A DNA stretch of 64,000 nt from IMGVR_UViG_3300032236_002285:372001-436000, one strand, 5' to 3'; shown: positions 17,295-64,000, numbered from the stretch's first letter. Program-made: numbers and translations. Notes: a model not told the origin generated them from the letters alone.

Positions 17295-17603
17295 ATGTTC
17301 CAGATAAACTCAATGTTATTAATTAAGATGGGTTGGACAGAATACAAATGGGGTTATTCTAATAGCCCCTTTTTTGATGATCCAAATTTAGTTAAGTTTT
17401 ATATAAGAAAAGAAACTAAATACATTATTATAAAAGAAATTGAAAGAAAGAAACAAATATTAAAAAATTCATATAAATTTGTAGTTGGTGATAAAGAAAT
17501 TTATTTCAACTCAAATATGGAGTTATTAAAATTAGTTATTAATCACGAAGCTTGTAACGAAGAATATAAAAGACACTTTAAACTAAATAGAATATTAAAA
17601 TGA
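17295..17603 (+). CDS. C-tagged hypothetical protein
   Basis: Start moved to MFQ after the upstream stop; ends KRHFKLNRILK. Confidence 0.7.
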   Translation: MFQINSMLLIKMGWTEYKWGYSNSPFFDDPNLVKFYIRKETKYIIIKEIERKKQILKNSYKFVVGDKEIYFNSNMELLKLVINHEACNEEYKRHFKLNRILK

Positions 17604-18193
17604 AAAAAGAAGTAAAAATATTAGGCTTATCATATAGCCAATCAAACACTGGATCATATGTGGTTGTTCTTTCTGAGAAGAAAGGTAAACGTAAATTACC
17701 TATAGTAATCAAGCCATCTGATGCTCAACAAATCGCACTTAAAATTGAAGGTGTTAAATCACCAAGACCCTTAACACATGACTTATTTAAAAGTGTTGTT
17801 GAAGCTTACACTATCGATGTTCAAGAAGTTTATATCTATGCTATACTCGAAGGTGTTTTCTATACGAAGTTAATTACATCCAACGGTTTAGATGAAGTTG
17901 AGATTGAATGTACTGCGGGTGATGGTATTGCTCTTTCGATTGTATTTGATTGTCCTTTGTATGCTTCTAAAGAAGTTTTAGAAATGTCAGGTGTTTATAT
18001 AAACGATGATGGTTCTACAATGAGTAACTCTGAAGTCGAAGTTGAAGATGATGAAGACTATGTAGAAGAACCAAAAAGGGTTGTATCTATTGAGAATCTA
18101 CAACATATGATGGAAGAAGCGCTTCGTAACGAAGAATATGAAATTGCGGCTGAAATCCGTGATAGAATTGCTAAGATGAAAGAGCAACAATAA
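17600..18193 (+). CDS. Bifunctional nuclease (DUF151) with a C-terminal UVR domain
   Basis: RKLPIVI, PRPLTHDL, EGVFY, and EEYEIAAEIRD. Confidence 0.88.
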   Translation: MKKEVKILGLSYSQSNTGSYVVVLSEKKGKRKLPIVIKPSDAQQIALKIEGVKSPRPLTHDLFKSVVEAYTIDVQEVYIYAILEGVFYTKLITSNGLDEVEIECTAGDGIALSIVFDCPLYASKEVLEMSGVYINDDGSTMSNSEVEVEDDEDYVEEPKRVVSIENLQHMMEEALRNEEYEIAAEIRDRIAKMKEQQ

Positions 18194-18207
18194 AATAAAG
18201 ATTAATA

Positions 18208-19041
18208 ATGATTAGCTATATCGGTGGTAAAAGTAAAATAGGATGTTGGATTAGAAATTATATTCCTAATAATATAGAAACTTATGTAGAGCCTTTTAGT
18301 GGTGCTTTCTGGGTTTTCTTTAAATTAAATACTCCGAGTTTTAAAAACCTTAAAACCGTTGTTTATAATGATGTCAACCCACTAAATGTAAACCTTTTCT
18401 TATGTTTGAAAGAATATAAGAAGTTCTGGGAAATGACTCAAAACACACCTATTGAGAGTAAGGAGTTATTTGATAAATGTAAATCAGATATCTTTGATAC
18501 TGATTTTGTATTAGATATGAATAACCCTAACTTTGATATTGCTTTCAAGTATGCTTATGTGTTAAGTCAAGTTTGGTCAGGTACTGACCCAAGAAAAGGA
18601 AATCTTATTCTAAAAGGTGGTTATGAAGGTAAAGATGGTACTTACAAATCTAAGTTTGAAATCTTTAGAAGTAAACTAATTGATCCTAAATGGCAAAAAT
18701 ATCTTGACTCAATTACTAATATTGAGAATATGGATTTTGAAGATGTTGTTAAAAAATACGACTCACCAACAACTTATTTTTATTGTGACCCACCATACTT
18801 CAAAACCGAAGACTACTATATCAACCATAGTTTTGGTATTCAAACACATGAAAGATTGGCTAACTGCTTAAAATCTATTCAAGGTAAGTTTTCACTGAGT
18901 TACTATCATTTTGATTTATTAGATGAATGGTTTCCGGTAACAGAATACACTTGGAAAAATAAAGAGTTTGCTAAAACAGCAATGGCTGTTCCAGGAAAAG
19001 CTCAAACCAAAGGTATAGAGCTCTTAATAATGAACTATTGA
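18208..19041 (+). CDS. Dam-like (D12 class) N6-adenine DNA methyltransferase
   Basis: YIGGKS, YVEPFSG, YND, DPPY, ELLIMNY. Confidence 0.9.
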   Translation: MISYIGGKSKIGCWIRNYIPNNIETYVEPFSGAFWVFFKLNTPSFKNLKTVVYNDVNPLNVNLFLCLKEYKKFWEMTQNTPIESKELFDKCKSDIFDTDFVLDMNNPNFDIAFKYAYVLSQVWSGTDPRKGNLILKGGYEGKDGTYKSKFEIFRSKLIDPKWQKYLDSITNIENMDFEDVVKKYDSPTTYFYCDPPYFKTEDYYINHSFGIQTHERLANCLKSIQGKFSLSYYHFDLLDEWFPVTEYTWKNKEFAKTAMAVPGKAQTKGIELLIMNY

Positions 19042-19042
19042 T

Positions 19043-19387
19043 ATGATACTTTTAACCAGTCAGTTATTATTTGAAAACTCTAAAACTTGGCCAAATCGTC
19101 TACAACGGATATTAACATCAATTGTTTATGATGAAACTGGCAATAGATTTGTTAAAATAAGTCAAAAAATATCAGCTGAGCTAACACAAGATTTATCATC
19201 ATCTAACCCCATCGTTGATATTATGGATGTAATTAATTTAGATTATGTAGATTATGTTTTCAATGAAGAAGAAATTGAAGAAATATTTGAAATGGTAGAC
19301 GATGTTCCGGATAATGATATAGTTAGAAAAGCAAAAGAATTTATTGTTTCTTATAGAAGAAATAAAAAAATAGACAAATTATTATGA
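19043..19387 (+). CDS. C-tagged hypothetical protein
   Basis: Ends RRNKKIDKLL. Confidence 0.7.
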   Translation: MILLTSQLLFENSKTWPNRLQRILTSIVYDETGNRFVKISQKISAELTQDLSSSNPIVDIMDVINLDYVDYVFNEEEIEEIFEMVDDVPDNDIVRKAKEFIVSYRRNKKIDKLL

Positions 19388-19698
19388 GGTACAAAAAGAT
19401 AATTAAGGAATGGAATGAAGCAACGCCTAAAGAAGTTTGGGAAGGAGTTAGAGATAATTTTCTTTTTGGATTTATTGGTGCAACACTGGTTGTATTTATT
19501 GCAACTAAAATAGATTTCGCAGTTTTGATTGGATACTTTACCTACTATATGTTTATGGGTAGAATTGTTAACCGTCCTAAATATGTAACTGACTTAGGTA
19601 AGTTAATTGTATTTCCAATACCATCAGCGATAGGTGCTTTCACCGGATATAAAATATCATACTTGATGATAGAATTTATAAGTCAAGTATTAAAATAA
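19384..19698 (+). CDS. Small membrane protein
   Basis: About three hydrophobic segments. Confidence 0.7.
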   Translation: MRYKKIIKEWNEATPKEVWEGVRDNFLFGFIGATLVVFIATKIDFAVLIGYFTYYMFMGRIVNRPKYVTDLGKLIVFPIPSAIGAFTGYKISYLMIEFISQVLK

Positions 19699-21144: not shown

Positions 21145-21232
21145 TTCGTTTATAATTATTTTTTATAATTTATATATCTAATGAGGTGAAGTCTGTTTTT
21201 TAATAAATAAATTATAAAATTATAAATTGTCT

Positions 21233-21463
21233 ATGAAATTTAAAATTGGAGATGTCGTAATTAAAACCACAGGTGGTAATAAAATGACGGTATCTGATAA
21301 TATAAAAGACGGTGTTTATAAATGCCTTTGGTTCGTTGAAAGTTCTTTAAACGAATCAATATTTAAAGAAGAAGATATCGTTACTCTGAGTGAGTATAAA
21401 AGATTTCTAAAAACAGAAGAAAGAGAAGATAAAATTAATCAGCTACTTAAAGATTCCAATTAA
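21233..21463 (+). CDS. DUF2158/YodC-like small beta-barrel protein with C-tag
   Basis: MKFKIGDVVIKTTGGNKMTV...CLWF; ends EREDKINQLLKDSN. Confidence 0.75.
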   Translation: MKFKIGDVVIKTTGGNKMTVSDNIKDGVYKCLWFVESSLNESIFKEEDIVTLSEYKRFLKTEEREDKINQLLKDSN

Positions 21464-22235
21464 CATTAGTTAATTTAGGTTCTGTATAAAGAGCACTAGA
21501 ATAGTACCCATCAAATACTTCTCTGTATTTTTCCATCCACTCATCAATATTAGGAATATTCATTTCTTCCATTTTTCTACCTAACCCAGTGGACATATAA
21601 GCTTGTAGCTCATCTGGTAAAACGTGATCAGCATAACCATATTCAGTGATACATTTAAACATAGAATCCTTAACAACACTATCACATTCATTATTTAATT
21701 GAGTCATTGCTGATTTATATTCTGGTAATGTAAAGTACATAGCATGAGCAAATTCGTGTTCAAGTAAATGATTAGCCAACTCATCAACACCTAAAAGATA
21801 ATAATTATGATCTCCCTCAACTTCTTTAATAGCTGATATAATAGATAACATTATTTTATCATAGGTATTAATTTCATCCTCAGGTACATTAAACATACAC
21901 TCTTCTAAAACATTAGATGGAATATTAAATCCAGACCAATCAGAACCATAAGTAAACTCTTGTTTACCATAATGTTGCTTGTAGATATCCATATACTTTG
22001 ATACCTTAAATTGTTTACCAATTATCTCATCAAATGCTGATTCATAAAACTCTTGAGATCTCATAAAAACCATAGCTCTAGAATGAGAATCATTAATCTT
22101 AACGGCCCAAATATGTTGACCACAATGATATAACTCAATTTTATTTAAGAAGTCTTCAGTTTTAGGAGCCAATAAGTGAGATGGGTCCGTAATTAATTTT
22201 TCTAAAAATAGTTTGTATGTTTTAATTATTCTCAT
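21447..22235 (-). CDS. N-tagged putative zinc metallopeptidase
   Basis: MRIIKTYKLFLE; HEFAH plus a downstream DELQAY. Confidence 0.65.
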   Translation of the reverse strand: MRIIKTYKLFLEKLITDPSHLLAPKTEDFLNKIELYHCGQHIWAVKINDSHSRAMVFMRSQEFYESAFDEIIGKQFKVSKYMDIYKQHYGKQEFTYGSDWSGFNIPSNVLEECMFNVPEDEINTYDKIMLSIISAIKEVEGDHNYYLLGVDELANHLLEHEFAHAMYFTLPEYKSAMTQLNNECDSVVKDSMFKCITEYGYADHVLPDELQAYMSTGLGRKMEEMNIPNIDEWMEKYREVFDGYYSSALYTEPKLTNVNWNL

Positions 22236-23305
22236 AATCTTGTATTATTTTTTAATGAATATAGTTTTATTATGTTTTTTTGTAATTTTTCACCAGAACG
22301 ATTGATTCTTTTTTGAATAAATGATAAAAACTTATCAACCGACATTGATCTAATAGCTTCTCCTGATAATGTAGGCTTATCTTGTTTATAAGCAATTGAC
22401 TCTTCTCTTCTATTTATTAACTCATTAGCGAGTCCGTTTTTCATTCTCTTCAACATCATATCAACATCAGCATCTGGATAAACACTTAGGATTTTATCAG
22501 ACATTTTTTGCTTAAAAGTTTTAGCATCAAATTCTTTCATTCTTTTTGCGAATCTCCAAGTTGGTGCTTTTTCTTTTACCTCTTCTATATCATATCTTTT
22601 AACATAAGGCCAAGCATCTTGAGTCATTGCGTTCATCTCATGTGGTTCACTCCAATAAATATAAAAGCCAATCTCATCATACCATATTTTCCAAATATCT
22701 TTTCTTATTTTAGCTCTATTAACATCTAAACCAAAAGTAACATCAGTTGATAACTGACCTTTATTTTTCTTCATTCTATTCCAACCTTCATATCCATGAT
22801 TTAACTCATGTGTTATAGAGGATTCAACTTCAATTGATAAACCCTCTCTATCATTAAATGAATCAGAAATAACAGCACCAATTTCAAGTACCAAGTGAAT
22901 AGTAACATCAGATCTATCATCAATACTAGGTCTAATTTCTGAACCACCTTCTTCTCCAATATTATAACAAGCACCAGTTCCAACAAATTTCTTTAATAAT
23001 CCTGTAGTTGGAAACCTTTTATTATAATTATCATCAGTCATTACTTTTATTGAATAAGTAACCTTCATTGATGAAATAGGGTATTTGGGCCAAAATTCAC
23101 TATTAATAAATAACGATAAGTCTTCTTTATTATACTCCTTTATAACTGAGTAATCTCTATTATCATTCTTATCGGCTAATTCATCTTCCTTAATAAATGA
23201 ATCAAAGCACTGATTAAACTCGTCTAATAGGAACTGATTATAAATTAGAGTAGCTTCTGCTACACCATGTGCTTCAAATAATTGATATGATTTTATATGT
23301 TTCAT
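22232..23305 (-). CDS. N-tagged putative zinc metallopeptidase
   Basis: MKHIKSYQLFE; HELNH plus a downstream EMNA; TAATATATA box 5 nt upstream. Confidence 0.6.
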   Translation of the reverse strand: MKHIKSYQLFEAHGVAEATLIYNQFLLDEFNQCFDSFIKEDELADKNDNRDYSVIKEYNKEDLSLFINSEFWPKYPISSMKVTYSIKVMTDDNYNKRFPTTGLLKKFVGTGACYNIGEEGGSEIRPSIDDRSDVTIHLVLEIGAVISDSFNDREGLSIEVESSITHELNHGYEGWNRMKKNKGQLSTDVTFGLDVNRAKIRKDIWKIWYDEIGFYIYWSEPHEMNAMTQDAWPYVKRYDIEEVKEKAPTWRFAKRMKEFDAKTFKQKMSDKILSVYPDADVDMMLKRMKNGLANELINRREESIAYKQDKPTLSGEAIRSMSVDKFLSFIQKRINRSGEKLQKNIIKLYSLKNNTRL

Positions 23306-25085: not shown

Positions 25086-25943
25086 ATGAAAGGTTTTAGA
25101 CCATATAACAAGGCAGATATTTTCAACACACTTGATAATATCACAATCACTAAAAATGAAAACAACCAGGTTATCACCAGTTATGGCGGTCGAGTAATCA
25201 ACATTACCAATGTCTCTAATCGTTACGAGATATTTGATATTGTTAAGTATCTAAAGGATAAAATTGAATCTATCGAAAAAAACTTTACCATAAGTAAATA
25301 CTCTCTTGGTCTTACAAGAGGTCGCCAATCACTAACTTTAGTTTCTGATGAAGTAGAAGTTGGTGGTGTTAAGTTTCATAAAACCTTTTACATTCTAAAC
25401 TCAACTGATAAATCTCGTAGACTTCACTTCAGTGCTGGTCTACATTCTGATAAATTTTATTTTATTGGCGCTAATAATGTTGGTTTGACTAAACTACATT
25501 TAAAAGGTGTTACACAAGCCGCAGAGGATGCTTCTGCTGCTCTTAATGGTGAAACATTTGATGAGCAAATTGAATCACTAAATTCATTAGTAGGACATCG
25601 TATTCAATTTTCTAAAATTCGTCAAGTAATTCTTGGTGATAAGCAAGATGTTCCACAAATTAATCACCGTAAGTTTGATGCTTTTAAGAACTCTATTAGA
25701 TATGCTAGCTCTGATAATAAAATCACTTTAACCAGTGACCAAAGAAATCAGTTGTTTACAGAGTCGGAAAAGCTTACTACTATTCAACATGATTTTTATA
25801 TTGATGCTTTCTTTGCTTTTCAAATTTATATGAGATTGTTTAATAAGCAAGATGCTCATATTATCAAGAATGAAACGGCTCGTATTATGAAAATAACTCA
25901 ATGGGCGGTTCGTAATAACGTTTTAGAATCACTTGGTATCTAA
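25086..25943 (+). CDS. DUF932-like protein with C-tag
   Basis: VSNRYEI and YILNSTDKS..HFSAGL..KLH resemble DUF932 motifs; ends RNNVLESLGI. Confidence 0.55.
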   Translation: MKGFRPYNKADIFNTLDNITITKNENNQVITSYGGRVINITNVSNRYEIFDIVKYLKDKIESIEKNFTISKYSLGLTRGRQSLTLVSDEVEVGGVKFHKTFYILNSTDKSRRLHFSAGLHSDKFYFIGANNVGLTKLHLKGVTQAAEDASAALNGETFDEQIESLNSLVGHRIQFSKIRQVILGDKQDVPQINHRKFDAFKNSIRYASSDNKITLTSDQRNQLFTESEKLTTIQHDFYIDAFFAFQIYMRLFNKQDAHIIKNETARIMKITQWAVRNNVLESLGI

Positions 25944-26155
25944 TGAAATTTGACCACGATATATTATTTCAGTTCCTATCAGAGGAAGATCAAAAATCAT
26001 TTATGGTTTGGGACAATGTTATTATTAACTATGCCGGAAACATTTTGGCAACTTTCAGATCACCATTTGATGAGAGAATTGTAATACCATTTGAAGAATA
26101 CCAAATGAAGTTGAAACAAAAAGAAAGAGAAATTAAGTTAAATAAAATATTATAA
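25943..26155 (+). CDS. C-tagged hypothetical protein
   Basis: Ends EREIKLNKIL. Confidence 0.7.
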   Translation: MKFDHDILFQFLSEEDQKSFMVWDNVIINYAGNILATFRSPFDERIVIPFEEYQMKLKQKEREIKLNKIL

Positions 26156-28193: not shown

Positions 28194-28946
28194 ATGATAG
28201 AATTGCTACGCAATCAACTAGAGTGTTTTAACGACTTACAATTTGAATTTGATCCTAAATTACATAGATATACATACGAAGGTGAGCCTTTTGTTTCTGT
28301 AACTCGATTCATACAACAATTTCACAAGCCATTTGAACAAGACTATTGGTCTAAAGTAAAAGCCGATCAGGCCGGTGTTCCACAAGATTGGATATTAGCC
28401 GAATGGAAAAAATTAAATGATTATGCTAATGAAGTTGGTACCGACACTCACCAATGGATTGAAGATTACTTTAATCAAATTTGGAAACCTCTTCCTAATA
28501 ACTTAGATGTTATACACCGTATTAATAAATTTAATAAGATTTATGCTAAACATCTTTATAAACTTGAGCCTCTAAAGTTTGAGGTGAGAGTATTTTCAAA
28601 AAGATGGAAAATAGCCGGAATGATTGACTCTTTATTTGTTTATAGAGGAAAGATTTACATTCTTGACTGGAAAACAAATAAAGACTTTACAGATAATAAC
28701 CATAAGAAAGGCACCTATGAGAAACTACTTGCGCCTTTTCAAGATTACTATAAAAATCATCTAAACGAATACTCAATACAACTATCTATGTATGCCTTAA
28801 TTTTAGAAGAGTGGGGCTTTCAAGTAGGTGGCGCTTACATAGTTCATATTGGACCTGGTGATGAAGAAGCAGAACTATATAAAGTAGTTGACATGAGAGA
28901 CAACCTAAAATTATTTTTAAATGGATCTATACAGGAGTCTAACTAA
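28194..28946 (+). CDS. PD-(D/E)XK superfamily exonuclease
   Basis: SVT, GTDTHQWIE, IAGMID, ILDWKT, YSIQLSMY. Confidence 0.85.
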   Translation: MIELLRNQLECFNDLQFEFDPKLHRYTYEGEPFVSVTRFIQQFHKPFEQDYWSKVKADQAGVPQDWILAEWKKLNDYANEVGTDTHQWIEDYFNQIWKPLPNNLDVIHRINKFNKIYAKHLYKLEPLKFEVRVFSKRWKIAGMIDSLFVYRGKIYILDWKTNKDFTDNNHKKGTYEKLLAPFQDYYKNHLNEYSIQLSMYALILEEWGFQVGGAYIVHIGPGDEEAELYKVVDMRDNLKLFLNGSIQESN

Positions 28947-29226
28947 TAGTGATGATTTTTTAAACTACTTCTGTGATGTATTAGAAGATAATATATCAAC
29001 TAAAGCAGGTTATAAGGTTAATATTAGTTTCAAGAAACATGACATGTCTATATTCTTTTTTATAGATGGATCGTCTATACTACAAGTAATACCTGATAAA
29101 GATTTACAATATACATATGCTCACGTTCCTTCTTATGAGAAGGAGATAAGACATTCAATTGGAGTAGCCGAGAAACAATATAAGAGAGATAAAACGATAG
29201 AAGAGATCATAAAAAAAGAGAGTTAA
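28921..29226 (+). CDS. C-tagged hypothetical protein
   Basis: Ends KRDKTIEEIIKKES. Confidence 0.65.
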   Translation: MDLYRSLTNSDDFLNYFCDVLEDNISTKAGYKVNISFKKHDMSIFFFIDGSSILQVIPDKDLQYTYAHVPSYEKEIRHSIGVAEKQYKRDKTIEEIIKKES

Positions 29227-32073: not shown

Positions 32074-32392
32074 TGATTATGTTGAATACAAACTAAGACT
32101 AAAAGTAACAACTCATCTTAGATTAGCCGGGCTTGATACTAATGTTGATATATCATCATTGGTTGAAAAGGTTAAAGAAATGGGTGACTATAAAATAAGT
32201 TGGCAAGAGAATATACCAGTTGCTATAAATATGTTTGACTTTCCACATAAAGTAGAAGTTGATTTTGGTAAGTACTTTATTTTAAACGAAGATGGTAGTT
32301 TTAAGCAGCAACTTTATTCATCAGAGTTTATAGATTTTTCTCTAAAAGAAATGAGAGAATATAGATTAAGTAAAATATTAAAAGAGTTATGA
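32066..32392 (+). CDS. C-tagged hypothetical protein
   Basis: Ends MREYRLSKILKEL. Confidence 0.7.
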   Translation: MISDYVEYKLRLKVTTHLRLAGLDTNVDISSLVEKVKEMGDYKISWQENIPVAINMFDFPHKVEVDFGKYFILNEDGSFKQQLYSSEFIDFSLKEMREYRLSKILKEL

Positions 32393-33381: not shown

Positions 33382-33406
33382 TTAAAATATTTTGTATATT
33401 TGCATT

Positions 33407-33769
33407 ATGAATATTTCCAATCGAGAAAAGAAAAGACGACAACATTCAAAAGAATTAAACTCTTTTAGAAATAAAATGGGTAAACATATTGTTTGGTTTG
33501 ACTCTTTGTCAACAACGAAGCAATATGATTTGCTATTTGGTTGGAAAAGAGAGAAGAAAACAAACAAGTTACAATCACCTGAAGAAAAAACAATCTTGAG
33601 ACCAACCTATGTTGGTTACAGAAGAAAAATGGTAAAACAAAAAATCACTTCTTATCCAGCGTCACTTAAACACTTTATAATTAAATGTAGAATGAACCCA
33701 AATTTCCAACCTCATAAAACAAGAGTTAGGGATGCGGCAATCGATATACTTTTAAATAACAAAAAATAA
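33407..33769 (+). CDS. Basic C-tagged hypothetical protein
   Basis: TATATTTG at 33395-33402 precedes the ATG at 33407; ends RDAAIDILLNNKK. Confidence 0.65.
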   Translation: MNISNREKKRRQHSKELNSFRNKMGKHIVWFDSLSTTKQYDLLFGWKREKKTNKLQSPEEKTILRPTYVGYRRKMVKQKITSYPASLKHFIIKCRMNPNFQPHKTRVRDAAIDILLNNKK

Positions 33770-36261: not shown

Positions 36262-36499
36262 AGTAATGTGTGTTAGTAATAAGGGTTGGGAACCTCTTCC
36301 GATAACAATCGGTAAGATTTATGATGTTATTAGGTTAGAGAATATACCATTCTCACCACATAGGTATGATGATCCAAGTGGTCCTTTTTATTTAATCAAG
36401 TGTGACAATAAAGAATTAAAACATATTGATGCTAATAGATTTCGTGAGTTAACATTAGATGAGAAAAGAGAATTAAAACTTGAAGATTTGGGAATATGA
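36254..36499 (+). CDS. C-tagged small beta-rich protein
   Basis: TIGKIYDV..YLIKCD..; ends KRELKLEDLGI. Confidence 0.75.
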   Translation: MNKVMCVSNKGWEPLPITIGKIYDVIRLENIPFSPHRYDDPSGPFYLIKCDNKELKHIDANRFRELTLDEKRELKLEDLGI

Positions 36500-36825
36500 T
36501 GCTAAATTGTAGCAGTGAAGAGTCTAAACAAGTGTGTCAAATTATTAATGAATTTGACAAACATAGAGAAAATTATATAAAAGTTTTTAATGTTGAGTTA
36601 ACAAAAGGTAAAGTTTCTAATAGAATACATATCGGTGCACCATTAAGACAAGTAGAAGTTAATTGTTTTAAAGTAAGACATTCAAGTGAATTTGCTTACA
36701 ATAAAGTTTCAACTGGTACACGATATATCTATGAAGGTGATATATTATACACAGAGATTTATAAATGGTATAATAGACATCTACGAGACAATAAATTAGA
36801 AGAATTATTTAATGGAATTTTATAA
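36496..36825 (+). CDS. C-tagged hypothetical protein
   Basis: Ends LRDNKLEELFNGIL. Confidence 0.7.
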   Translation: MMLNCSSEESKQVCQIINEFDKHRENYIKVFNVELTKGKVSNRIHIGAPLRQVEVNCFKVRHSSEFAYNKVSTGTRYIYEGDILYTEIYKWYNRHLRDNKLEELFNGIL

Positions 36826-37105
36826 CTTATTTAAGTTAGTATTTTCAATTGTAATTTATATTATATTATCACCAATCATTATTCCTATTTTATTAATCAA
36901 TGAAGTAAGATGGAATAAAGGTGTTTGTAGAAAGTGTAACTCTGATAGATATGATTTAGATTTCAGACCAGATAAGTTTATTAACCATCACTATGTTTGT
37001 AAGAAGTGTGGATATAGATTCTTATCATCAAGACATAGAATTCAACCGAGTAATAATCAATTAAAAACTCTGATAAGAGAAAATAAGATAAATAAAATAT
37101 TATAA
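36812..37105 (+). CDS. C-tagged membrane-anchored Zn-ribbon protein
   Basis: TM helix, CRKC..CKKC; ends IRENKINKIL. Confidence 0.7.
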   Translation: MEFYNLFKLVFSIVIYIILSPIIIPILLINEVRWNKGVCRKCNSDRYDLDFRPDKFINHHYVCKKCGYRFLSSRHRIQPSNNQLKTLIRENKINKIL

Positions 37106-37106: not shown

Positions 37107-37370
37107 ATGATTTACCCATCAAGAATAAAAGGTCAGGAATATCCTCTTAGTAAAGGGGATATTGTTGTTTGTATAACTGAGAATTTTGGTGAGTTTACTT
37201 TTGGTAAAAAATATACTTTATACTCTGACTTTGATGGTAATACTTTACCAATTACATCAGATTTAGGTAATCAACCATTACCTTGTTACTACGCACCAAC
37301 TGGATATTATTTTCTACCTCTTCATATCTGGAGAGAATTAAAAATAAACAAAGTATTAGAAAATGAGTAA
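37107..37370 (+). CDS. C-tagged small beta-rich protein
   Basis: GDIVVCI..FTFGKKY; ends WRELKINKVLENE. Confidence 0.7.
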   Translation: MIYPSRIKGQEYPLSKGDIVVCITENFGEFTFGKKYTLYSDFDGNTLPITSDLGNQPLPCYYAPTGYYFLPLHIWRELKINKVLENE

Positions 37371-37542
37371 AGTGACAAAAGAAGAACTTGAAAGATATAA
37401 AAAAATCTTAGCAAATGAAATATCAGCTTTTTTAAAAGAATGTCCAATTTGTAAACAAAAGTTCAAAGATTTTTTAGATATCAAAATCATTTGCACTAAT
37501 TGTGATAGAGAAGAGAAACTAAACAAAGTATTAGAAAAATGA
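37363..37542 (+). CDS. C-tagged 59-aa Zn-finger protein (absent from the ORF track)
   Basis: MSKVTKEELERYKKILANEISAFLKECPICKQKFKDFLDIKIICTNCDREEKLNKVLEK; fills the gap and overlaps both neighbours. Confidence 0.75.
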   Translation: MSKVTKEELERYKKILANEISAFLKECPICKQKFKDFLDIKIICTNCDREEKLNKVLEK

Positions 37543-37763
37543 TAAAAGTAGGAGATAGAGTTAGAAACATCAGAGTAGAAGTATATAAAGATGAACCTAT
37601 AATTGTGATTGATAAATCTTGGAGAGATAGATATCATATTAAATACCTAAATGTTTATACGGTTCAGAATACAAATATGTTATCTTGGGTTGATGAAGGT
37701 GATATAACTTTAGATATAGAATATTATAGAAATCTTAAATTAGAAAAATTATTAAATGAATAA
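37539..37763 (+). CDS. C-tagged small beta-rich protein
   Basis: MIKVGDRV; ends YRNLKLEKLLNE. Confidence 0.7.
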   Translation: MIKVGDRVRNIRVEVYKDEPIIVIDKSWRDRYHIKYLNVYTVQNTNMLSWVDEGDITLDIEYYRNLKLEKLLNE

Positions 37764-38757: not shown

Positions 38758-39133
38758 TATTAGAACTATACAAAATTGGGTAAATCAAACACAAGTTGTT
38801 TGGTTACCTGACTTTGCTGAGATATTAGATATATCTTTTGATGAATGGGGTAGTAATTTAAACATACTATATCAGTTTGACTATCAGTTAGCCGGTACCA
38901 ATCAAAAAATGTTTAACATTTGGATAATGGATTCTAAAAACATATGTCCACCACCAGGTGACTTTTATAAATTCTTTGGAACAGTTGAAAAAAGATTTTC
39001 AGAAGTAAATTTGGCTAATGCTAATAACGGTAGAACAATCACGGTTGATACAGTAACAAAGTGTTATATTTTTATAGAAGAAGTAAAAACAATTGCTGAA
39101 AACAGAGAAGAAAAATTAAACGAAATACTATGA
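38744..39133 (+). CDS. C-tagged hypothetical protein
   Basis: Ends NREEKLNEIL. Confidence 0.7.
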   Translation: MKSLDIRTIQNWVNQTQVVWLPDFAEILDISFDEWGSNLNILYQFDYQLAGTNQKMFNIWIMDSKNICPPPGDFYKFFGTVEKRFSEVNLANANNGRTITVDTVTKCYIFIEEVKTIAENREEKLNEIL

Positions 39134-39475: not shown

Positions 39476-39730
39476 ATGATTGAAAAAGGATTGGTCAGCT
39501 ATGTTAAAGGTGAAAAGGTTGTCTTATTCCGCAGAAAATCAAATGGTTATCCGAAAGGAATCAAAGATGGTGTTGAATACACTATAAGAGGAATCTATGG
39601 TGAAGGTATTGAAGTTGCTTTAAATTCTTCTGATGGTGTGGGTTGGTTACAATCCATAAAAGTCCACAAGACATATATGATACCTAAATATGCCTTGAGA
39701 GATATAAATCTTAAAAAACTTCTTAATTAA
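39476..39730 (+). CDS. C-tagged small beta-rich protein
   Basis: Start moved to just after the upstream stop; ends LRDINLKKLLN. Confidence 0.65.
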   Translation: MIEKGLVSYVKGEKVVLFRRKSNGYPKGIKDGVEYTIRGIYGEGIEVALNSSDGVGWLQSIKVHKTYMIPKYALRDINLKKLLN

Positions 39731-48850: not shown

Positions 48851-49096
48851 TTATCTAATTGGTTTGTAATTAGGAATAGCACCTTTGTAATTAGTGTTAC
48901 CTTTTCTGATTTCTTCATGTTCAGCTTCTACTGCTGCTTGATATTCAGGATCATTCTTTTCATCCTGTTTACAATTCATACAAATAACATCTTCATTAAA
49001 CATAGACATTGTAGTAACACCATTAGTTGGCTCACCACATCTATCACAGATAGATTTATTCATTTCAAATGATTCGTATGTTTTTAAGTGTTTCAT
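48851..49096 (-). CDS. N-tagged Zn-finger protein
   Basis: MKHLKTYESFE; CDRC..MSMFN..ICMNCK. Confidence 0.75.
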   Translation of the reverse strand: MKHLKTYESFEMNKSICDRCGEPTNGVTTMSMFNEDVICMNCKQDEKNDPEYQAAVEAEHEEIRKGNTNYKGAIPNYKPIR

Positions 49097-49689: not shown

Positions 49690-50322
49690 ATGAGCAAGAT
49701 AAAACAACTTGAGATTAAAAAACTATTGAAAGAGTTAGATTTTATTGAATCTGATTATAACTATAAAAGTGAAATAATAAATGAGGCTGATAGTAATTTC
49801 ATTAAAACGGTTAATGATCTACTTGAAGAGCATCCATTATTAAAAGAGGTATTTGACAAAAAAATTAATAGTAAGCTAGATCAAATATTTGAAAAAAAAT
49901 CAGAACAGATAAAAGAAAAGATTGAAGTTGATATCGAAAAAGAAAATCAAGAGGAAGTATTTGAAGATGTTATAATTGAAAAGTTTGTAGATGATAAGGT
50001 TAAAAAACTTTATAGAGAAATAGCTAAACTAACACATCCAGATAGAGTCAGTAATAAAAAACTAAACGACCTGTATATTAAAGCAACCGATTGCTATCAT
50101 AACAATGATAGACCCGGAACTTATACTATTTGTGATGAGTTAGATATAGACTATGAACCAGATGATTCAGATAATCAAATGATAAGTAGTAAGATTTCTA
50201 GCATTAAAGGTAAGATTAATTTCATAGAATCAACTATGACTTGGAATTGGTACCACTCAAATGATGAAAAAGAAAAAGAACAAATGGTGTTAAGATATAT
50301 TAAAAATAGATTAGATAATTGA
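49690..50322 (+). CDS. J-domain-like co-chaperone
   Basis: VKKLYREIAKLTHPDR (HPD motif). Confidence 0.7.
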   Translation: MSKIKQLEIKKLLKELDFIESDYNYKSEIINEADSNFIKTVNDLLEEHPLLKEVFDKKINSKLDQIFEKKSEQIKEKIEVDIEKENQEEVFEDVIIEKFVDDKVKKLYREIAKLTHPDRVSNKKLNDLYIKATDCYHNNDRPGTYTICDELDIDYEPDDSDNQMISSKISSIKGKINFIESTMTWNWYHSNDEKEKEQMVLRYIKNRLDN

Positions 50323-50943
50323 TATTTTAACTTTTCTTTCGTTTAATAATGATTGTAACTCATCTTTTCTGAAAAATCTCTTATAAATATCGTTTTCCTT
50401 ATCAAGGTTTTGAAGTTCCCAAGTATTACCATCAGCTGTTGTGTAGATATAATTCTCGTCACCATCTGCAACTTCAATAGTTTTAGATGAAAGTTTATCA
50501 TAAAACTTTTTAACATCACCATTAATTTGAAATAGTTTAACATCTTCCCAGTCTTTATTAGTTTCATTCCATGTTTGAAAAGCAATATAAACAGGGTTTT
50601 CTAGTTCATTGGAATTAATATCATAAATAAACATCCATTTACAAGGTTTATTGACAAATGTTTGATAATCTTCTGTATTTTGAACTGGTGACTTTTTCAA
50701 ACCTAAAGAAGATAGAGAATTAATAAATTCTATGTTATCTGATAAAAAGTCTAAAGTAAGTCTACCTTGATAAAAATCTTTAGGTAATTTTAAAGTATCA
50801 AAAATATCTTTTTCTTCAGCTGAAATAGCCGAAAGAAGCACATCATGCCATATATTCATCGATTCTAGTATATCAACTGACATAGTAACCAAGTCGATAA
50901 CTAAAGATTCTTTGAATTGTTTGTATGTTTTTATTGTCTTCAT
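50311..50943 (-). CDS. N-tagged hypothetical protein
   Basis: MKTIKTYKQFKE. Confidence 0.75.
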   Translation of the reverse strand: MKTIKTYKQFKESLVIDLVTMSVDILESMNIWHDVLLSAISAEEKDIFDTLKLPKDFYQGRLTLDFLSDNIEFINSLSSLGLKKSPVQNTEDYQTFVNKPCKWMFIYDINSNELENPVYIAFQTWNETNKDWEDVKLFQINGDVKKFYDKLSSKTIEVADGDENYIYTTADGNTWELQNLDKENDIYKRFFRKDELQSLLNERKVKISII

Positions 50944-61568: not shown

Positions 61569-61823
61569 ATGACTGATCTAACAGACAATCAACTTGAAAA
61601 GCTTTATGCTATGTCTGAAATCCACTACAAATGGTTCCAGATATATTCTCCTGAGACTAAATATGAAGATGTTTTAAAGCTTAATCATATAAAGATGTTA
61701 AGTATAATGGAAGGTTGTTCTGATTGTTCAGAAGATATGTTAGATTTTATTTTTGATGCTATTATTAGAGATTATAAAGAAATGTTAAATGATTATTCAA
61801 TTGGCTTAGACGATATTATCTAA
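61569..61823 (+). CDS. Hypothetical protein
   Basis: ORF within the operon. Confidence 0.6.
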   Translation: MTDLTDNQLEKLYAMSEIHYKWFQIYSPETKYEDVLKLNHIKMLSIMEGCSDCSEDMLDFIFDAIIRDYKEMLNDYSIGLDDII

Positions 61824-62186
61824 GTTCTTTCTTCTGCGATACTTTTGTTTTGACTTTTCCACTTCATCTTCGTTGTTTCCGTACATATAGTTATAATAAT
61901 AAAGAAGTGTTGCGTCTTGTAAGTTTTCTTTAATACAATCATCACAAATAGCAATCACGAATTGATCACCATCATGTGTTGAACCATAACCAGCGTCAAT
62001 GATATGAATTATACCATTATCAATCATTTCATTATTGACATTAACCAAACTACCATCTTCTCTTCTTTCTCTTTTCCAAATAACATCCTCTTCACTTTGA
62101 GGGGGTGAATCTTCAGTTGAGATTTTAGAACCCATTCTTGGTGTATAAGGAATTACATTATTTTTCTTACAACAGATGCAATACAT
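61806..62186 (-). CDS. C-tagged Zn-binding protein
   Basis: CICC...AGYGSTHD..ICDDC; ends RRRKNLDNIV. Confidence 0.7.
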   Translation of the reverse strand: MYCICCKKNNVIPYTPRMGSKISTEDSPPQSEEDVIWKRERREDGSLVNVNNEMIDNGIIHIIDAGYGSTHDGDQFVIAICDDCIKENLQDATLLYYYNYMYGNNEDEVEKSKQKYRRRKNLDNIV

Positions 62187-62335
62187 TAGTTAAATATCTT
62201 TTTAATTTTTTTCATTCTTTTCTTTTCTCTACTTAATGGTCTGTTATAAGTTATAATAGAAGATATTCTTGTTTCTAAATTAGGTAGAAACCTTATTTTA
62301 GCACCTGGCTTTAACTCAAAGAATTCTTTTTTCAT
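62186..62335 (-). CDS. C-tagged 49-aa protein (absent from the ORF track)
   Basis: MKKEFFELKPGAKIRFLPNLETRISSIITYNRPLSREKKRMKKIKKIFN; coupled to both neighbours. Confidence 0.7.
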   Translation of the reverse strand: MKKEFFELKPGAKIRFLPNLETRISSIITYNRPLSREKKRMKKIKKIFN

Positions 62336-62517
62336 ATATCAAATATGTTTTTAATTTTTTTCATTCTTCTGCTTTGCTTAGAAGGAAACTTCATTGTCAT
62401 AAAAGATGGATAAATAATTCTATCGTAGTTTTTAATACTATCTTGAATTTTACCCTTCTGTTCTTTTCTAAGTGATGCTAGTTCTTCTAACATCTTCTTC
62501 ATTTGTTCTTCGTTCAT
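62332..62517 (-). CDS. C-tagged small protein
   Basis: Ends RRMKKIKNIFDI. Confidence 0.7.
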   Translation of the reverse strand: MNEEQMKKMLEELASLRKEQKGKIQDSIKNYDRIIYPSFMTMKFPSKQSRRMKKIKNIFDI

Positions 62518-62657
62518 AGATTAAACAAGTTCTTTATTTTCTCTTTTCTTTTTGTTCGTCTTGATGGTAGAATAGTTACTGAATGTGTTAAAGAGGATAT
62601 ACCACCTTGTAATCCACTTGGTAAAGTAAAAACAAAATCAAAATTCTTTATATTCAT
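62514..62657 (-). CDS. C-tagged 47-aa protein (absent from the ORF track)
   Basis: MNIKNFDFVFTLPSGLQGGISSLTHSVTILPSRRTKRKEKIKNLFNL; ATGA overlaps on both sides. Confidence 0.7.
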   Translation of the reverse strand: MNIKNFDFVFTLPSGLQGGISSLTHSVTILPSRRTKRKEKIKNLFNL

Positions 62658-63496
62658 TTCTCTGCTACTTTTCTAAAGTCAGTTAAGATAGTGTTTCTTA
62701 GTTCTCTGAACTCTTCATCTAATTCCTCCCAAGTCCATCTTTTTCTTTTAATCTTATCCCAAATAAAGTTAGCACAAGAAAAATCTGTAATACGACCTGA
62801 CGTTGCTATTTGAGTAGCAAACATAGGAATTCTCAATGAGTGAAAAAGAGATTTAACTCCGGTGTGGTATTCGTCAGTTAGTTCTAATTTCTTTTTGCAC
62901 TTGACCCAGCTATTAGAACTTATATGAGAAGTTGCGTGTCTGAGTTTAGCTAAGTTGATTTTGAAATTATCAAACTTGATAGTTTCTTTTAACTTAGCCC
63001 AATCTGGTGCCCAAATACATTCTAGATTGTTTATACGATGCCATTCTAAATCAGCTTTGAACTTATCAGGAGTGTAAACGTGAATGTTGAATAAACCATT
63101 ACGAATCTCAGTTGATTCAACAGAGTTGTTAGCGATCATAATAATATCCCAATCAGAATCAGAGGTAGCTGTTCCGTATACCTGAGACCCGAAGATGTAC
63201 ACGTTAAAGACCCGACTTGGGTGTATCTTTGATGCTTTAATTATTGTTTCTAATGTTGGTATCATTATCTTATCTATTTTAATATTTCTTACTGCTGATG
63301 GATCTAAACTCTCTAAAATCCCCTCAATACAATCTTGACAAAGAATTGAAACTCCACCATCTAATGTGTGTATAGAAGCACACTTCACAACGTGAGAGTC
63401 ACAACCATCACATATCTTATTATCATCAACAAACATTAGAGATGCTTTAAGTACTTGTGGTCTTTCTGGAAACTTAGATAAGTGTATTTTTCTCAT
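62654..63496 (-). CDS. Pol-beta-type nucleotidyltransferase fused to an N-terminal Zn-finger/tag module
   Basis: YIFGSQVYGTATSDSDWDIIMI; KSLFHSLRI; N-terminal CDGC..CQDC then RNIKIDKI-M. Confidence 0.8.
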   Translation of the reverse strand: MRKIHLSKFPERPQVLKASLMFVDDNKICDGCDSHVVKCASIHTLDGGVSILCQDCIEGILESLDPSAVRNIKIDKIMIPTLETIIKASKIHPSRVFNVYIFGSQVYGTATSDSDWDIIMIANNSVESTEIRNGLFNIHVYTPDKFKADLEWHRINNLECIWAPDWAKLKETIKFDNFKINLAKLRHATSHISSNSWVKCKKKLELTDEYHTGVKSLFHSLRIPMFATQIATSGRITDFSCANFIWDKIKRKRWTWEELDEEFRELRNTILTDFRKVAEK

Positions 63497-63714
63497 ATTC
63501 CTAATTCTTTTAACTTGTCGTCTCTTAATTTACTAAGCAATTCATACTTACTACGAATGAATCTTGTTTCACCAATACAATTACCATTATCATCTTCTAA
63601 ATCAAGACCTCTAATGTCATCATCACCTGTAATAGTGAACTGATGTCCTTTCTTATATACTTTACCGTTAAATTCAAAGTCCTCTAAAAAAACTACTCTG
63701 TCTCCAATTCTCAT
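63493..63714 (-). CDS. C-tagged small beta-rich protein
   Basis: MRIGDRVVF; ends LRDDKLKELGI. Confidence 0.75.
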   Translation of the reverse strand: MRIGDRVVFLEDFEFNGKVYKKGHQFTITGDDDIRGLDLEDDNGNCIGETRFIRSKYELLSKLRDDKLKELGI

Positions 63715-63953
63715 TTTAATATTTTATTTATTTGTTGTTCTCTAAATTCTTCTAACGTCATAAAATGTTTAGCATCCATCTTCCTAAACTTACCATCATC
63801 ACACTTGATAACATATGATGGTGCTACAGGTTTTAATGTAACTGGATCATAAATAACAGGAGTCAATTCACACTCATAAAAGCTACCTGGCTTTACATAG
63901 TAAGCCATTTCATCAACTGGTGATATAGTATCTTTAAGATAGAGTGTAGCCAT
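63711..63953 (-). CDS. C-tagged small beta-rich protein
   Basis: YVIKCDDG..HFMTLEEFREQQINKILK; TATCTTTG at 63958-63965 (-). Confidence 0.75.
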   Translation of the reverse strand: MATLYLKDTISPVDEMAYYVKPGSFYECELTPVIYDPVTLKPVAPSYVIKCDDGKFRKMDAKHFMTLEEFREQQINKILK

Positions 63954-63976
63954 TTTACAAAGATAGTTATTTTTAT

Positions 63977-64000
63977 TTAGATTCCTAATTCACTTAACTT
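63977..64000 (-). CDS. 3' end of another C-tagged gene (truncated by the window)
   Basis: Reads ...KLSELGI-stop. Confidence 0.55.
   Translation of the reverse strand, partial: KLSELGI

What the first reader, a model, noticed from the sequence alone, without database searches (positions are those of the whole stretch)
17295..64000. A second, mutually exclusive tag: C-terminal R-x-x-K-[LI]-x-x-[LI]-[LG] helix on about 23 mostly small proteins
Seen: C-termini include RHFKLNRILK, RNKKIDKLL, REDKINQLL, RNNVLESLGI, REIKLNKIL, RDKTIEEII, REYRLSKIL, RDAAIDILL, RELKLEDLGI, RDNKLEELF, RENKINKIL, RELKINKVL, REEKLNKVL, RNLKLEKLL, REEKLNEIL, RDINLKKLL, RRKNLDNIV, RMKKIKKIF, RMKKIKNIF, RKEKIKNLF, RDDKLKELGI, REQQINKIL and ..KLSELGI. 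The bodies are unrelated (beta-rich domains, Zn ribbons, a membrane protein, a DUF932-like protein). They mostly sit behind host-type or TAAAC-N18-TATAA motifs, and none also has the N-terminal tag. Inference: a conserved amphipathic docking helix with a fixed Arg and i+4/i+7/i+8 hydrophobics that recruits many effectors to one partner. Candidates are a protease (degron for timed turnover), an AAA+ ATPase, a phage compartment or a host complex. I know of no described function for this tag.
Basis: partly seen in the sequence, partly recalled or inferred. Interest (0 to 1): 0.88.

Follow-up and report, generated by a model that had tools for sequence, protein, structure and literature searches.

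The report
Shared C-terminal helix tag on early phage proteins
About one in six proteins of this 476-kb freshwater phage, almost all of them small, unrelated products of early genes, end in the same ten-residue helix (R-[DE]-x-K-[LI]-x-x-[LI]-[L or GI]); the motif is real, is selected at the protein level and occurs in unrelated phages, but its binding partner is unknown and I found no description of it.

Summary
All 23 C-termini are present. Genome-wide, 116 of 681 called genes carry the motif within 6 residues of the stop, against about 4-5.5 expected. Arg codons follow genome usage, so selection acts on the protein. The bodies fall into 112 BLAST clusters with almost no Pfam or PHROG matches. 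In 50 of 51 homologue pairs the tag survives at 48% body identity. AlphaFold puts it at the far end of a single projecting C-terminal helix.

Tagged genes lie in compact arrays enriched for the Bacteroidota host-type promoter box. They are nearly absent (3 of 182 genes) behind the late-type motif that also precedes the capsid and terminase genes.

The N-terminal tag (45 genes, no overlap) sits mainly in that late class.

The C-tag also occurs in Mahaphage relatives, one with its own dialect, and in small siphovirus-like contigs that share no protein with this phage. Cultured relatives of both backbones lack it. The reader of the tag is therefore probably host-encoded.

Best guess: a docking handle for early proteins, possibly feeding Clp-type proteolysis. 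The phage encodes an N-domain-less ClpC and a ClpP. The partner is not shown.

The parts
17571..17597 (+). tag core RHFKLNRIL of gene 17253-17603 (116 aa)
19358..19384 (+). tag core RNKKIDKLL of gene 19043-19387 (114 aa)
21422..21448 (+). tag core REDKINQLL of gene 21227-21463 (DUF2158 SH3-like body). R and K are invariant in 32 aligned homologues (of 120 retrieved). AF2 places the tag at the end of helix 54-77.
25911..25937 (+). tag core RNNVLESLG(I) of gene 25086-25943 (285 aa, no Pfam match)
26126..26152 (+). tag core REIKLNKIL of gene 25943-26155 (70 aa)
29185..29211 (+). tag core RDKTIEEII of gene 28921-29226 (101 aa)
32354..32380 (+). tag core REYRLSKIL of gene 32066-32392 (108 aa)
33728..33754 (+). 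tag core RDAAIDILL of gene 33392-33769 (125 aa)
36467..36493 (+). tag core RELKLEDLG(I) of gene 36254-36499; the stop overlaps the next start (ATGA)
36784..36810 (+). tag core RDNKLEELF of gene 36496-36825. This gene and the next are absent from related contigs in runs X3 and X7.
37076..37102 (+). tag core RENKINKIL of gene 36812-37105 (N-terminal membrane segment)
37332..37358 (+). tag core RELKINKVL of gene 37107-37370
37507..37533 (+). tag core REEKLNKVL of gene 37363-37542 (59 aa)
37728..37754 (+). tag core RNLKLEKLL of gene 37539-37763 (74 aa)
39104..39130 (+). tag core REEKLNEIL of gene 38744-39133 (129 aa)
39698..39724 (+). tag core RDINLKKLL of gene 39410-39730 (106 aa)
61809..61835 (-). 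tag core RRKNLDNIV of gene 61806-62186 (basic sub-flavour)
62192..62218 (-). tag core RMKKIKKIF of gene 62186-62335 (49 aa, basic, ..IF sub-flavour)
62341..62367 (-). tag core RMKKIKNIF of gene 62332-62517 (61 aa)
62523..62549 (-). tag core RKEKIKNLF of gene 62514-62657 (47 aa)
63499..63525 (-). tag core RDDKLKELG(I) of gene 63493-63714 (73 aa)
63717..63743 (-). tag core REQQINKIL of gene 63711-63953 (80 aa)
63977..64000 (-). 3' end (..KLSELGI-stop) of a gene that runs off the window (genome 435977-436210, RDKKLSELGI). It is part of the dense minus-strand tagged arm at genome 433.8-475 kb (window part: 61806-64000).

Best explanation
The motif is a short linear motif at the protein level. It forms the last two and a half turns, plus a C-cap, of a solitary C-terminal helix. 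Its invariant Arg sits in the middle of the hydrophobic face (residues -4, +4, +7, +8). It is appended to otherwise unrelated, mostly orphan proteins of 50-200 aa that are made from early gene arrays (host-RNA-polymerase type). I propose that it is a common docking handle that plugs these early proteins into one abundant cytoplasmic partner. The partner is most likely encoded by the host, a freshwater low-GC Bacteroidota lineage, not by the phage. The leading candidate function is hand-off to a Clp-type AAA+ protease. The tag would act either as a degron that clears early proteins, or as a tether like the C-terminal ClpX-binding peptide of SspB, bringing whatever the variable body binds to the protease. 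The huge phages would reinforce this with their own N-domain-less ClpC and ClpP. Shown here: the motif is real, it is selected at the protein level, it is helical in a model, it belongs to the early class, and it cuts across phage backbones. Inferred: that it docks to a single partner, that the partner is host-encoded, and the Clp link. My rough split is about 0.45 for a host-read docking handle and about 0.2-0.25 for the Clp version specifically.
For: Enrichment is 20-30 fold over internal and shuffled controls. Synonymous codon usage at Arg and Lys equals the genome average. The bodies fall into 112 clusters from 116 proteins and share no family. The tag is retained in 50 of 51 homologue pairs found with the body alone, at 48% mean body identity. 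Within one family (32 aligned homologues) R66 and K69 are invariant, while the residues after the motif vary in length and sequence across the 120 homologues. The AF2 model shows an SH3-like barrel plus one projecting helix, 54-77, with the tag at its tip. Tagged membrane proteins have N-terminal membrane segments followed by basic residues, so the tag would face the cytoplasm. Genes behind the host -7 box TAnnTTTG are tagged in 51 of 183 cases; genes behind the late-type AATATATA/TAATATAT motif in 3 of 182, and that motif also precedes the capsid and terminase genes. The same tag dialect is present in the small siphovirus-like contigs G016 (6 of 50 genes) and G019 (5 of 61). At BLASTP E<=1e-3, G019 shares no protein with this phage; G016 shares only three non-tag proteins with it. 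The tag is absent from Tenacibaculum phage PTm1, a relative by terminase, and from Nonlabens phage P12024L, a capsid relative of G016. Lineage dialects exist: R-K-x-x-I-x-x-L-L-COOH in LR756504. For the Clp link: the phage ClpC homologue aligns to B. subtilis ClpC from residue 149 onward, so it lacks the N-domain, and it keeps a VGF loop. ClpP lies in an early-type array among tagged genes. The ClpC-like gene is present in every huge relative examined, whether near-complete or complete (LR756501, with few tags, included), and is absent from the untagged PTm1 and PAU. The conserved small gene immediately upstream of the ClpC-like gene ends in a tag-like ERR[DE]EI[IL]DD[LV]LN.
Against: No partner was identified, and no complex could be modelled with the tools available. 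Phage ClpP is missing from the tagged, near-complete contigs G004 and G018 and from the small phages. LR756501 has a ClpC-like gene but few tags. The Clp link is therefore neither necessary nor sufficient at the phage level, and host Clp proteins could not be examined. The tag does not resemble known ssrA-type degrons, and in most copies it is not at the exact C-terminus. A stable helix is not an ideal handle for an unfoldase. Two scans of 185,579 prokaryote genomes with DNA patterns of the LGI type found no host gene or prophage, so no host protein that the tag might mimic was found. The host-encoded inference rests on two backbone contrasts and on BLAST-level absence of shared proteins. A small, fast-evolving phage receptor could have been missed.
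Confidence: 0.42

Rival explanations
1. The tag is a self- or hetero-association module. It would be a short coiled-coil segment with a buried polar Arg layer that bundles tagged proteins with each other or with a helical hub. This would assemble the early proteome into oligomers or a condensate.
For: The tag lies on a long solitary helix that does not pack on the body. Arg sits at the centre of the hydrophobic face and is followed by hydrophobic layers at +4 and +7. The best match of the tag profile in the PDB is the zero-layer region of the R-SNARE VAMP2 (..ERDQKLSEL..), but at E = 0.55 it is only an analogy. This reading needs no separate receptor, which would explain the tag's presence in phages that share no proteins.
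Against: Only about 10 conserved residues are available, with weak periodicity upstream. Promiscuous pairing of about 100 unrelated proteins has no obvious benefit. Lineage dialects and the strictly invariant Arg fit a fixed external pocket at least as well. No multimer model could be run.
Confidence: 0.2
2. The tag is a localisation signal. It would take early proteins to the inner face of the membrane, to the nucleoid or to a phage-induced compartment, in the manner of MinD/FtsA membrane-targeting helices or microcompartment encapsulation peptides.
For: It is a terminal amphipathic helix with a net charge of +1.4. The phage also has an N-terminal helix tag, as microcompartment cargo systems do.
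Against: An invariant Arg in the middle of the hydrophobic face, a preferred acidic neighbour and only three hydrophobic residues make it a poor lipid binder. Small temperate-like phages carry the tag, which argues against a compartment encoded by the huge phage. I did not search for shell proteins.
Confidence: 0.12
3. The conserved C-terminal peptide or its codons serve translation. It would act either as a nascent-chain effect on termination and re-initiation at the overlapping ATGA start, or as the A-rich start context of the downstream gene in a host that does not use Shine-Dalgarno sites.
For: 57% of tagged genes overlap the next start, against 22% of untagged genes. TGA stops and ATA codons for the last Ile are enriched. 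The genome does not use Shine-Dalgarno sites.
Against: Tag frequency is the same for genes with only an upstream overlap (39%) and genes with only a downstream overlap (36%), so it tracks membership of an array, not downstream coupling. 31% of tagged genes have no close downstream gene. The distance from motif to stop varies from 0 to 6 residues. Codon usage in the motif is neutral.
Confidence: 0.05
4. The tag is a capsid-targeting or ejection-protein signal, a C-terminal counterpart of the T4 capsid targeting sequence or of encapsulin cargo-loading peptides.
For: The phage has a T4-type capsid protein and terminase. Diverse proteins that share only a short terminal peptide is exactly the T4 internal-protein pattern (PMC3012670). 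The ..LGI ending is loosely reminiscent of encapsulin cargo peptides; this comparison is from memory.
Against: Tagged genes are almost excluded from the late promoter class that drives the capsid and terminase genes (3 of 182). The N-terminal tag occupies that class instead. More than 100 cargo species, and tags in 32-37 kb phages, are implausible for capsid loading.
Confidence: 0.04
5. The tag is a DNA-level junction. The tag-coding sequence would be kept as microhomology for shuffling small gene cassettes between phages.
For: Related contigs lack exactly the two tagged genes 36496-37106, with the joint running from start codon to start codon and 5 shared bases. The tag occurs in unrelated phage backbones.
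Against: Arg is encoded by AGA, CGT, CGA, AGG and CGC at genome-average ratios, and Leu/Ile codons differ at first positions. The amino acids are conserved, not the nucleotides. The observed joint lies at the ATG, not inside the tag.
Confidence: 0.04

Closest known systems
T4 capsid targeting sequence (CTS) of internal proteins
   Same: A short terminal peptide is the only thing shared by a diverse set of otherwise unrelated phage proteins (PMC3012670). This phage has a T4-type head.
   Different: The CTS is N-terminal, belongs to late-assembled head contents and is cleaved off. The C-tag is C-terminal, sits on early-class genes and never co-occurs with the CTS-like N-terminal tag of this phage.
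C-terminal tethering peptide of the ClpX adaptor SspB (XB motif), and C-terminal degrons such as ssrA and the MuA end
   Same: The architecture matches: a folded body, a linker, then a short conserved C-terminal peptide that many different proteins could use to reach one AAA+ protease. The phage carries a ClpC-like ATPase and a ClpP.
   Different: There is no sequence resemblance. The tag is helical and often followed by extra residues. Dependence on any protease is untested. What I state about these motifs comes from established knowledge, not from a test here.
Encapsulation peptides of bacterial microcompartments and cargo-loading peptides of encapsulins
   Same: Both are about 10-18 residue amphipathic terminal helices, N- or C-terminal, that address unrelated cargo to one shell.
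   Different: No shell gene is known here. The tagged genes are early, and the tag also occurs in small phages. The invariant Arg is not a feature of those peptides.
R-SNARE zero-layer segment (VAMP2 ..ERDQKLSEL..)
   Same: An Arg sits in a core position and is followed by hydrophobic layers at +4 and +7. It was the best, though non-significant, PDB match of the tag profile.
   Different: E = 0.55, so there is no homology. SNARE motifs span about 60 residues and eight or more layers; the tag spans about 10 residues.
PIP box and bacterial clamp-binding motifs
   Same: The spacing polar-x-x-[LI]-x-x-h-h near a C-terminus with basic flanks resembles Q-x-x-[LIM]-x-x-[FY]-[FY].
   Different: Gln and the aromatic residues are missing. 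No tagged protein carries a recognisable replication domain. Over 100 clamp clients is implausible.

Membership tests
T4-type capsid targeting sequence | Located at the N-terminus of the precursor | tested here: not met
   The motif lies 0-6 residues from the C-terminus.
T4-type capsid targeting sequence | Carried by proteins made with the head (late) genes | tested here: not met
   Only 3 of 182 genes behind the late-type motif are tagged. That motif precedes the capsid and terminase genes.
T4-type capsid targeting sequence | Removed by the prohead protease; the proteins are found in virions | not testable with these tools
   This needs virion proteomics.
ssrA / ClpX C-motif degrons | Exact C-terminal position with non-polar last residues and a free carboxylate | tested here: inconclusive
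   The ..LGI flavour (27 of 30) and the LR756504 ..LL dialect end exactly at the C-terminus. The other flavour has 0-6 variable trailing residues.
ssrA / ClpX C-motif degrons | Tag-dependent degradation by an AAA+ protease | not testable with these tools
   Only co-occurrence data exist: phage ClpC-like and ClpP are present in some tagged phages but not all.
Adaptor tether (SspB XB type) | Folded substrate-binding body, then a linker, then a short C-terminal docking peptide | tested here: met
   The AF2 model shows a barrel (10-53) plus a helix (54-77) with the tag at its end.
Adaptor tether (SspB XB type) | The peptide binds the N-domain of the unfoldase | not testable with these tools
   The phage ClpC-like protein lacks the N-domain.
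Membrane-targeting amphipathic helix (MinD/FtsA type) | Uninterrupted hydrophobic face flanked by basic residues, with no invariant residue | tested here: not met
   An invariant Arg lies in the centre of the hydrophobic face, next to a preferred Asp/Glu.
Clamp-binding motif / PIP box | Conserved Gln and aromatic pair; present on replication and repair proteins | tested here: not met
   Position 1 is D/E/N and positions 7-8 are aliphatic or Gly. No tagged protein has a replication domain.
Single paralogous protein family | Detectable homology of the bodies | tested here: not met
   There are 112 BLASTP clusters among 116 bodies. No Pfam or PHROG family is shared by more than two tagged proteins.
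R-SNARE | Significant sequence match and a heptad motif of about 60 residues | tested here: not met
   E = 0.55 and the match covers only 15 residues.

The most novel reading that the evidence does not exclude
The tag is an address tag for the whole early proteome that is specific to one host group. Unrelated phages, from huge T4-like myoviruses to 32-37 kb siphoviruses, would have converged on it or exchanged it. It would plug dozens to hundreds of orphan effector domains into one host machine. One attractive version has the effectors acting as adaptors that deliver host targets to a Clp protease, a bacterial-virus analogue of viral hijacking of degradation machinery. Lineage dialects would then track the host receptor.
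Probability: 0.2. Interest if true: 0.92.

Novelty: new variant of a known kind. Interest (0 to 1): 0.8.

Why it matters
Huge phages are mostly genetic dark matter. Here a ten-residue motif sorts about 17% of one such proteome, and 13-47% of genes in the sampled regions of relatives, into one functional class tied to early expression. A single peptide therefore gives experimental access to more than 100 orphan proteins at once, by pull-down, half-life or localisation assays. If the reader of the tag is a host machine, the tag is also a sequence marker of host range that cuts across phage taxonomy. It could also become a portable tag for work in Bacteroidota. Together with the CTS-like N-terminal tag on late genes, it suggests that these phages address their proteins by temporal class.

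Tried and rejected
**Family searches.** Pfam and PHROG scans of 180 tagged proteins found only scattered single domains: DUF2158, DUF1660, DUF6011, Cse60 and BtpA.

**ESM Atlas look-alikes.** These were uninformative.

**Chance or composition.** Rejected by three controls.

**DNA-level motif.** Rejected by codon usage.

**Translational coupling.** Rejected because tag frequency is the same for upstream-only and downstream-only overlaps.

**Shared phage-encoded receptor.** BLASTP of the small tagged phages against this genome found nothing shared by all of them.

**Phage ClpP as an obligatory partner.** Rejected because it is absent from tagged, near-complete contigs.

**Host proteins or prophages with the tag.** Two pattern scans of genome contigs gave 0 hits. 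These were narrow, LGI-type codon patterns, so this is weak negative evidence.

**Cultured carriers.** None were found. PTm1 and Nonlabens P12024L lack the tag. tblastn of a tagged family hit only the two Mahaphage records.

**Tag profile against the PDB.** Only a non-significant VAMP2 match came back.

**The small gene next to ClpC.** The model is of moderate quality and gives only weak tail-tube/Hcp-like matches, not a MecA or ClpS fold.

**The AAA+ proteins at 15168 and 57238.** No informative homologues.

I reran it with permitted rows only.

Full report
**Context.** The window is bases 372,001-436,000 of a single 476,236-bp virus record with 29.9% GC. The genome has 53 tRNA genes and makes practically no use of Shine-Dalgarno sites. 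It has a T4-type large terminase and a Gp23-type capsid protein. Its closest relatives are the uncultured 634-642 kb phages LR745206 and LR756502, with 78% terminase identity. LR756504 and LR756501 follow at 41-44%, then Sphingomonas phage PAU and Tenacibaculum phages PTm1 and PTm5. Near-identical DNA occurs in freshwater metagenomes. Bacteroidota-type -7 promoter boxes (TAnnTTTG) are common upstream of gene arrays. The host is therefore most likely a freshwater Bacteroidota lineage.

I called genes by keeping the longest non-overlapping ORFs, which gave 681 genes covering 95% of the genome. Among them, the core R-x3-[LIVM]-x2-[LIVM]-[LIVMFG] ends within 6 residues of the stop in 116 genes. 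The internal rate predicts 3.7. Shuffled tails give 5.5 +/- 2.3, with a maximum of 14 in 1000, and reversed tails give 2. An unbiased search for C-terminal motifs returns the same motif at p of about 1e-79. The consensus is R-[DE>NQ]-x-K-[LI]-x-x-[IL]-[L>G>I,F]. It ends either as L-G-I-stop exactly, or as [IL]-L followed by 0-6 free residues, often N, G or D. In the ..LxxLGI form the Gly and the last Ile look like a classical helix C-cap; that reading is my own inference. 40% of genes of 60-100 aa and 31% of genes of 100-150 aa are tagged. None above 600 aa is.

**Selection acts on the protein, not the DNA.** The invariant Arg is encoded by AGA 83, CGT 22, CGA 7, AGG 3 and CGC 1, which is the genome-wide ratio. 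Lys is AAA or AAG at 77/23, again the genome ratio. Positions 4 and 7 swap Leu, Ile and Val through first-base changes. The only codon skews are ATA for the final Ile and TGA stops, and both are explained by the overlapping ATGA start of the next gene.

**The bodies are unrelated, and the tag is under purifying selection.** With the tag removed, the 116 bodies form 112 BLASTP clusters. Pfam and PHROG scans of 180 tagged proteins from this phage and its relatives found no family shared by more than two proteins and very few domains at all. I searched relatives using bodies alone. In 50 of 51 homologue pairs (mean identity 48%) the partner keeps the tag; the one exception is a near-variant. In the DUF2158 family of gene 21227-21463, 120 metagenomic homologues were retrieved. 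In an alignment of 32 of them, E-E-R-x-x-K is invariant. Across all 120, the residues after the motif vary freely in length and sequence.

**Structure.** AlphaFold2 models that protein as an SH3-like barrel (residues 10-53) with one long projecting helix (54-77; pLDDT 71-89). The tag sits at its far end. On a helical wheel the Arg lies in the middle of the face formed by positions -4, +4, +7 and +8. The Lys and the acidic residue lie on the flanks. That geometry suits a specific pocket or a buried polar layer, not lipid binding. Eight of 103 tagged proteins of 60-200 aa have N-terminal membrane segments followed by basic residues, the same share as untagged proteins. The tag should therefore face the cytoplasm.

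**Temporal class.** I grouped genes into same-strand arrays with gaps under 40 nt and scanned 100 nt upstream of each array.
- Behind the host-type -7 box, 51 of 183 genes are tagged.
- Behind AATATATA/TAATATAT, only 3 of 182 genes are tagged (Fisher p = 3e-6 at the array level).
- The terminase gene carries the latter motif about 24 nt upstream, and the capsid gene carries a close variant (TTATATATAG) at a similar distance. This motif behaves like a late promoter.

The C-tag is thus a mark of non-late, largely host-promoter-driven genes. The N-terminal tag, M-[KR]-[HY]-L-K-x-[FY]-[EN]-x-F, is on 45 genes and never occurs together with the C-tag. It is concentrated in the late class (26 of 154 genes in late-only arrays). 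It resembles, from memory, the N-terminal capsid targeting sequence of T4 internal proteins. Those proteins are described as diverse, with only that sequence in common (PMC3012670). The mutual exclusion of the two tags therefore reflects two temporal and functional classes.

**Not a coupling signal.** Tagged genes overlap the next start more often than untagged genes (57% against 22%). However, pooled over five genomes or genome segments, tag frequency is the same for genes with only an upstream overlap (39%) and genes with only a downstream overlap (36%). It is highest when both are present (67%). The tag therefore tracks membership of compact arrays, not re-initiation downstream.

**Distribution across phages.**
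- The last 50 kb of LR756502 has 51 tagged genes of 109. The first 50 kb of LR745206 has 20 of 109.
- A strict DNA pattern for the LGI flavour found 25 stretches in IMG/VR, in contigs of 25-32% GC. Fragments G001 and G006 have 60 and 57 tagged genes of 190 each.
- Two small contigs that CheckV rates complete also carry the tag: G016 (32 kb, 6 tags in 50 genes) and G019 (37 kb, with recombinase-like genes, 5 in 61). About 0.3 tags would be expected in each. At BLASTP E<=1e-3, G019 shares no protein with the 476-kb phage; G016 shares only three non-tag proteins with it.
- The capsid protein of G016 is related to that of Nonlabens phage P12024L, a marine flavobacterial siphovirus. That phage has no tag.
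- PTm1 has none either: 4 hits against 2.4 expected, and no comparable de novo motif.
- LR756504 uses a dialect, [EY/H]-R-K-x-x-I-x-x-L-L-COOH, on 58 of 443 genes in the sampled regions.
- LR756501 has only a few R-T-x-L-I-D-x-V-L ends. It also has a different C-terminal motif, DPYGEExW.

Presence of the tag thus cuts across two unrelated phage backbones and varies by lineage. This is what one expects if the reader of the tag belongs to the host. Horizontal exchange of small genes among phages of one host group would give the same picture.

**Candidate partner.** The genome encodes a 710-aa ClpC homologue. It aligns to B. subtilis ClpC from residue 149 to 800, so it has no N-domain. It keeps both AAA modules, the UVR/M region and a VGF loop. 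The genome also encodes a full-length ClpP. Its gene is the last of an eight-gene array that has a host-type box and tagged neighbours. Every huge relative examined, whether near-complete or complete, has the ClpC-like gene, and PTm1 and PAU do not. ClpP is present in most relatives but missing from G004 and G018. PAU also lacks ClpP. In the closest relatives the gene just upstream of the ClpC-like gene is conserved. Its best-conserved segment is a tag-like ERR[DE]EI[IL]DD[LV]LN followed by a short tail. Its model gives only weak tail-tube/Hcp-like matches. These facts make Clp-linked turnover or tethering the most concrete hypothesis. It remains circumstantial: the small tagged phages have neither gene, LR756501 has a ClpC-like gene but few tags, and no binding could be modelled.

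**Other leads.** The tag profile's best PDB match is the zero-layer segment of the R-SNARE VAMP2 (ERDQKLSEL) at E = 0.55. This is not homology. It is a useful picture of an Arg buried between hydrophobic layers, and it keeps a coiled-coil or self-association reading alive. Contigs of relatives, including contigs from a metatranscriptome library, cover several tagged genes at 90-95% identity. Two DNA runs hold a form that lacks exactly the two tagged genes 36496-37106, joined from start codon to start codon. Small tagged genes therefore come and go as cassettes.

**Verdict.** The finding is real, large in scale and, as far as four full-text searches show, undescribed. It works like the known terminal address peptides: the T4 capsid targeting sequence, adaptor tethers and degrons, and cargo peptides. 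It is not a member of any of them by the features I could test. The partner and the consequence of docking remain to be determined.

Noticed in passing
window 1324-6677, 21447-23305 (-), 30384-31511 (-), 42237-42767 (-), 48851-49096 (-), 50311-50943 (-); 45 genes genome-wide: An N-terminal tag M-[KR]-[HY]-L-K-x-[FY]-[EN]-x-F sits on 45 genes and never occurs with the C-tag. 26 of them lie in arrays behind the late-type motif. From memory it resembles the T4 capsid targeting sequence, so these may be packaged internal proteins. In contig G013 the ClpC-like protein itself starts MKKLKVYEEF.
   Followed up: partly
genome-wide; e.g. upstream of TerL (genome 38196) and the capsid gene (genome 62115): The motif (A/T)ATATATA (TAATATAT, AATATATA or GTATATAT) lies upstream of about 36% of untagged arrays, against 2.6% background. 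Its distance to the start codon is bimodal: 5-6 nt for about 48 genes, which may be near-leaderless, and 19-26 nt for about 60 genes. It is probably the late promoter.
   Followed up: partly
genome 284643-286775 (+), 440754-441512 (-), 284277-284624 (+): The phage encodes a ClpC homologue without the N-terminal domain and a ClpP. A conserved small gene directly upstream of the ClpC-like gene ends in a tag-like motif, and its model gives weak tail-tube/Hcp-like fold matches.
   Followed up: partly
L092-L101 (LR756501.1, first and last 100 kb): A different C-terminal motif, ..DPYGEExW[NDSE][DEK]-stop, occurs on at least 8 proteins of 72-843 aa. The R-type tag is rare in this genome.
   Followed up: no
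L082-L091 (LR756504.1, first and last 100 kb): A dialect of the tag, [E][YH]-R-K-x-x-I-x-[DE]-L-L at the exact C-terminus, occurs on 58 of 443 genes. Position 1 is Lys instead of Asp/Glu.
   Followed up: partly
window 36496-37106: Contigs of related phages in two freshwater DNA runs join 36495 directly to 37107. They lack exactly two tagged genes, and the joint runs from start codon to start codon with 5 shared bases. This is cassette-like gain or loss of small genes.
   Followed up: partly
genome 73332-73472 (+) and 297451-297648 (+): Two tiny tagged ORFs (66 and 75 aa, ..INKIF flavour) match positions 126-194 of the Gp23 capsid profile at E of about 1e-4 to 1e-5. A 261-aa ORF at 75676-76029 matches positions 184-305.
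   Followed up: no
window 10725-12638 (-): One ORF is a PitA-like phosphate transporter by its N-terminal sequence. The adjacent ORF is a 279-aa protein with a Bacteroidota-style signal peptide. They look like host-derived auxiliary genes. I named them by eye and did not test this.
   Followed up: no
genome 84859-86436 (+): The family-B DNA polymerase match spans an in-frame TAA, and the ORF is only 508 aa. The gene appears split or interrupted.
   Followed up: no
window 13636-13807 and 14824-14898; genome 218-272 kb: There are 53 tRNA genes in several clusters, three of them in the window (Leu-TAA, Arg-TCT, Met-CAT).
   Followed up: no
whole record: IMG/VR labels the 476-kb record a provirus. 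Its content (T4-type head genes, tRNA clusters, no obvious host flanks in the parts I read) looks like a free huge-phage genome.
   Followed up: no
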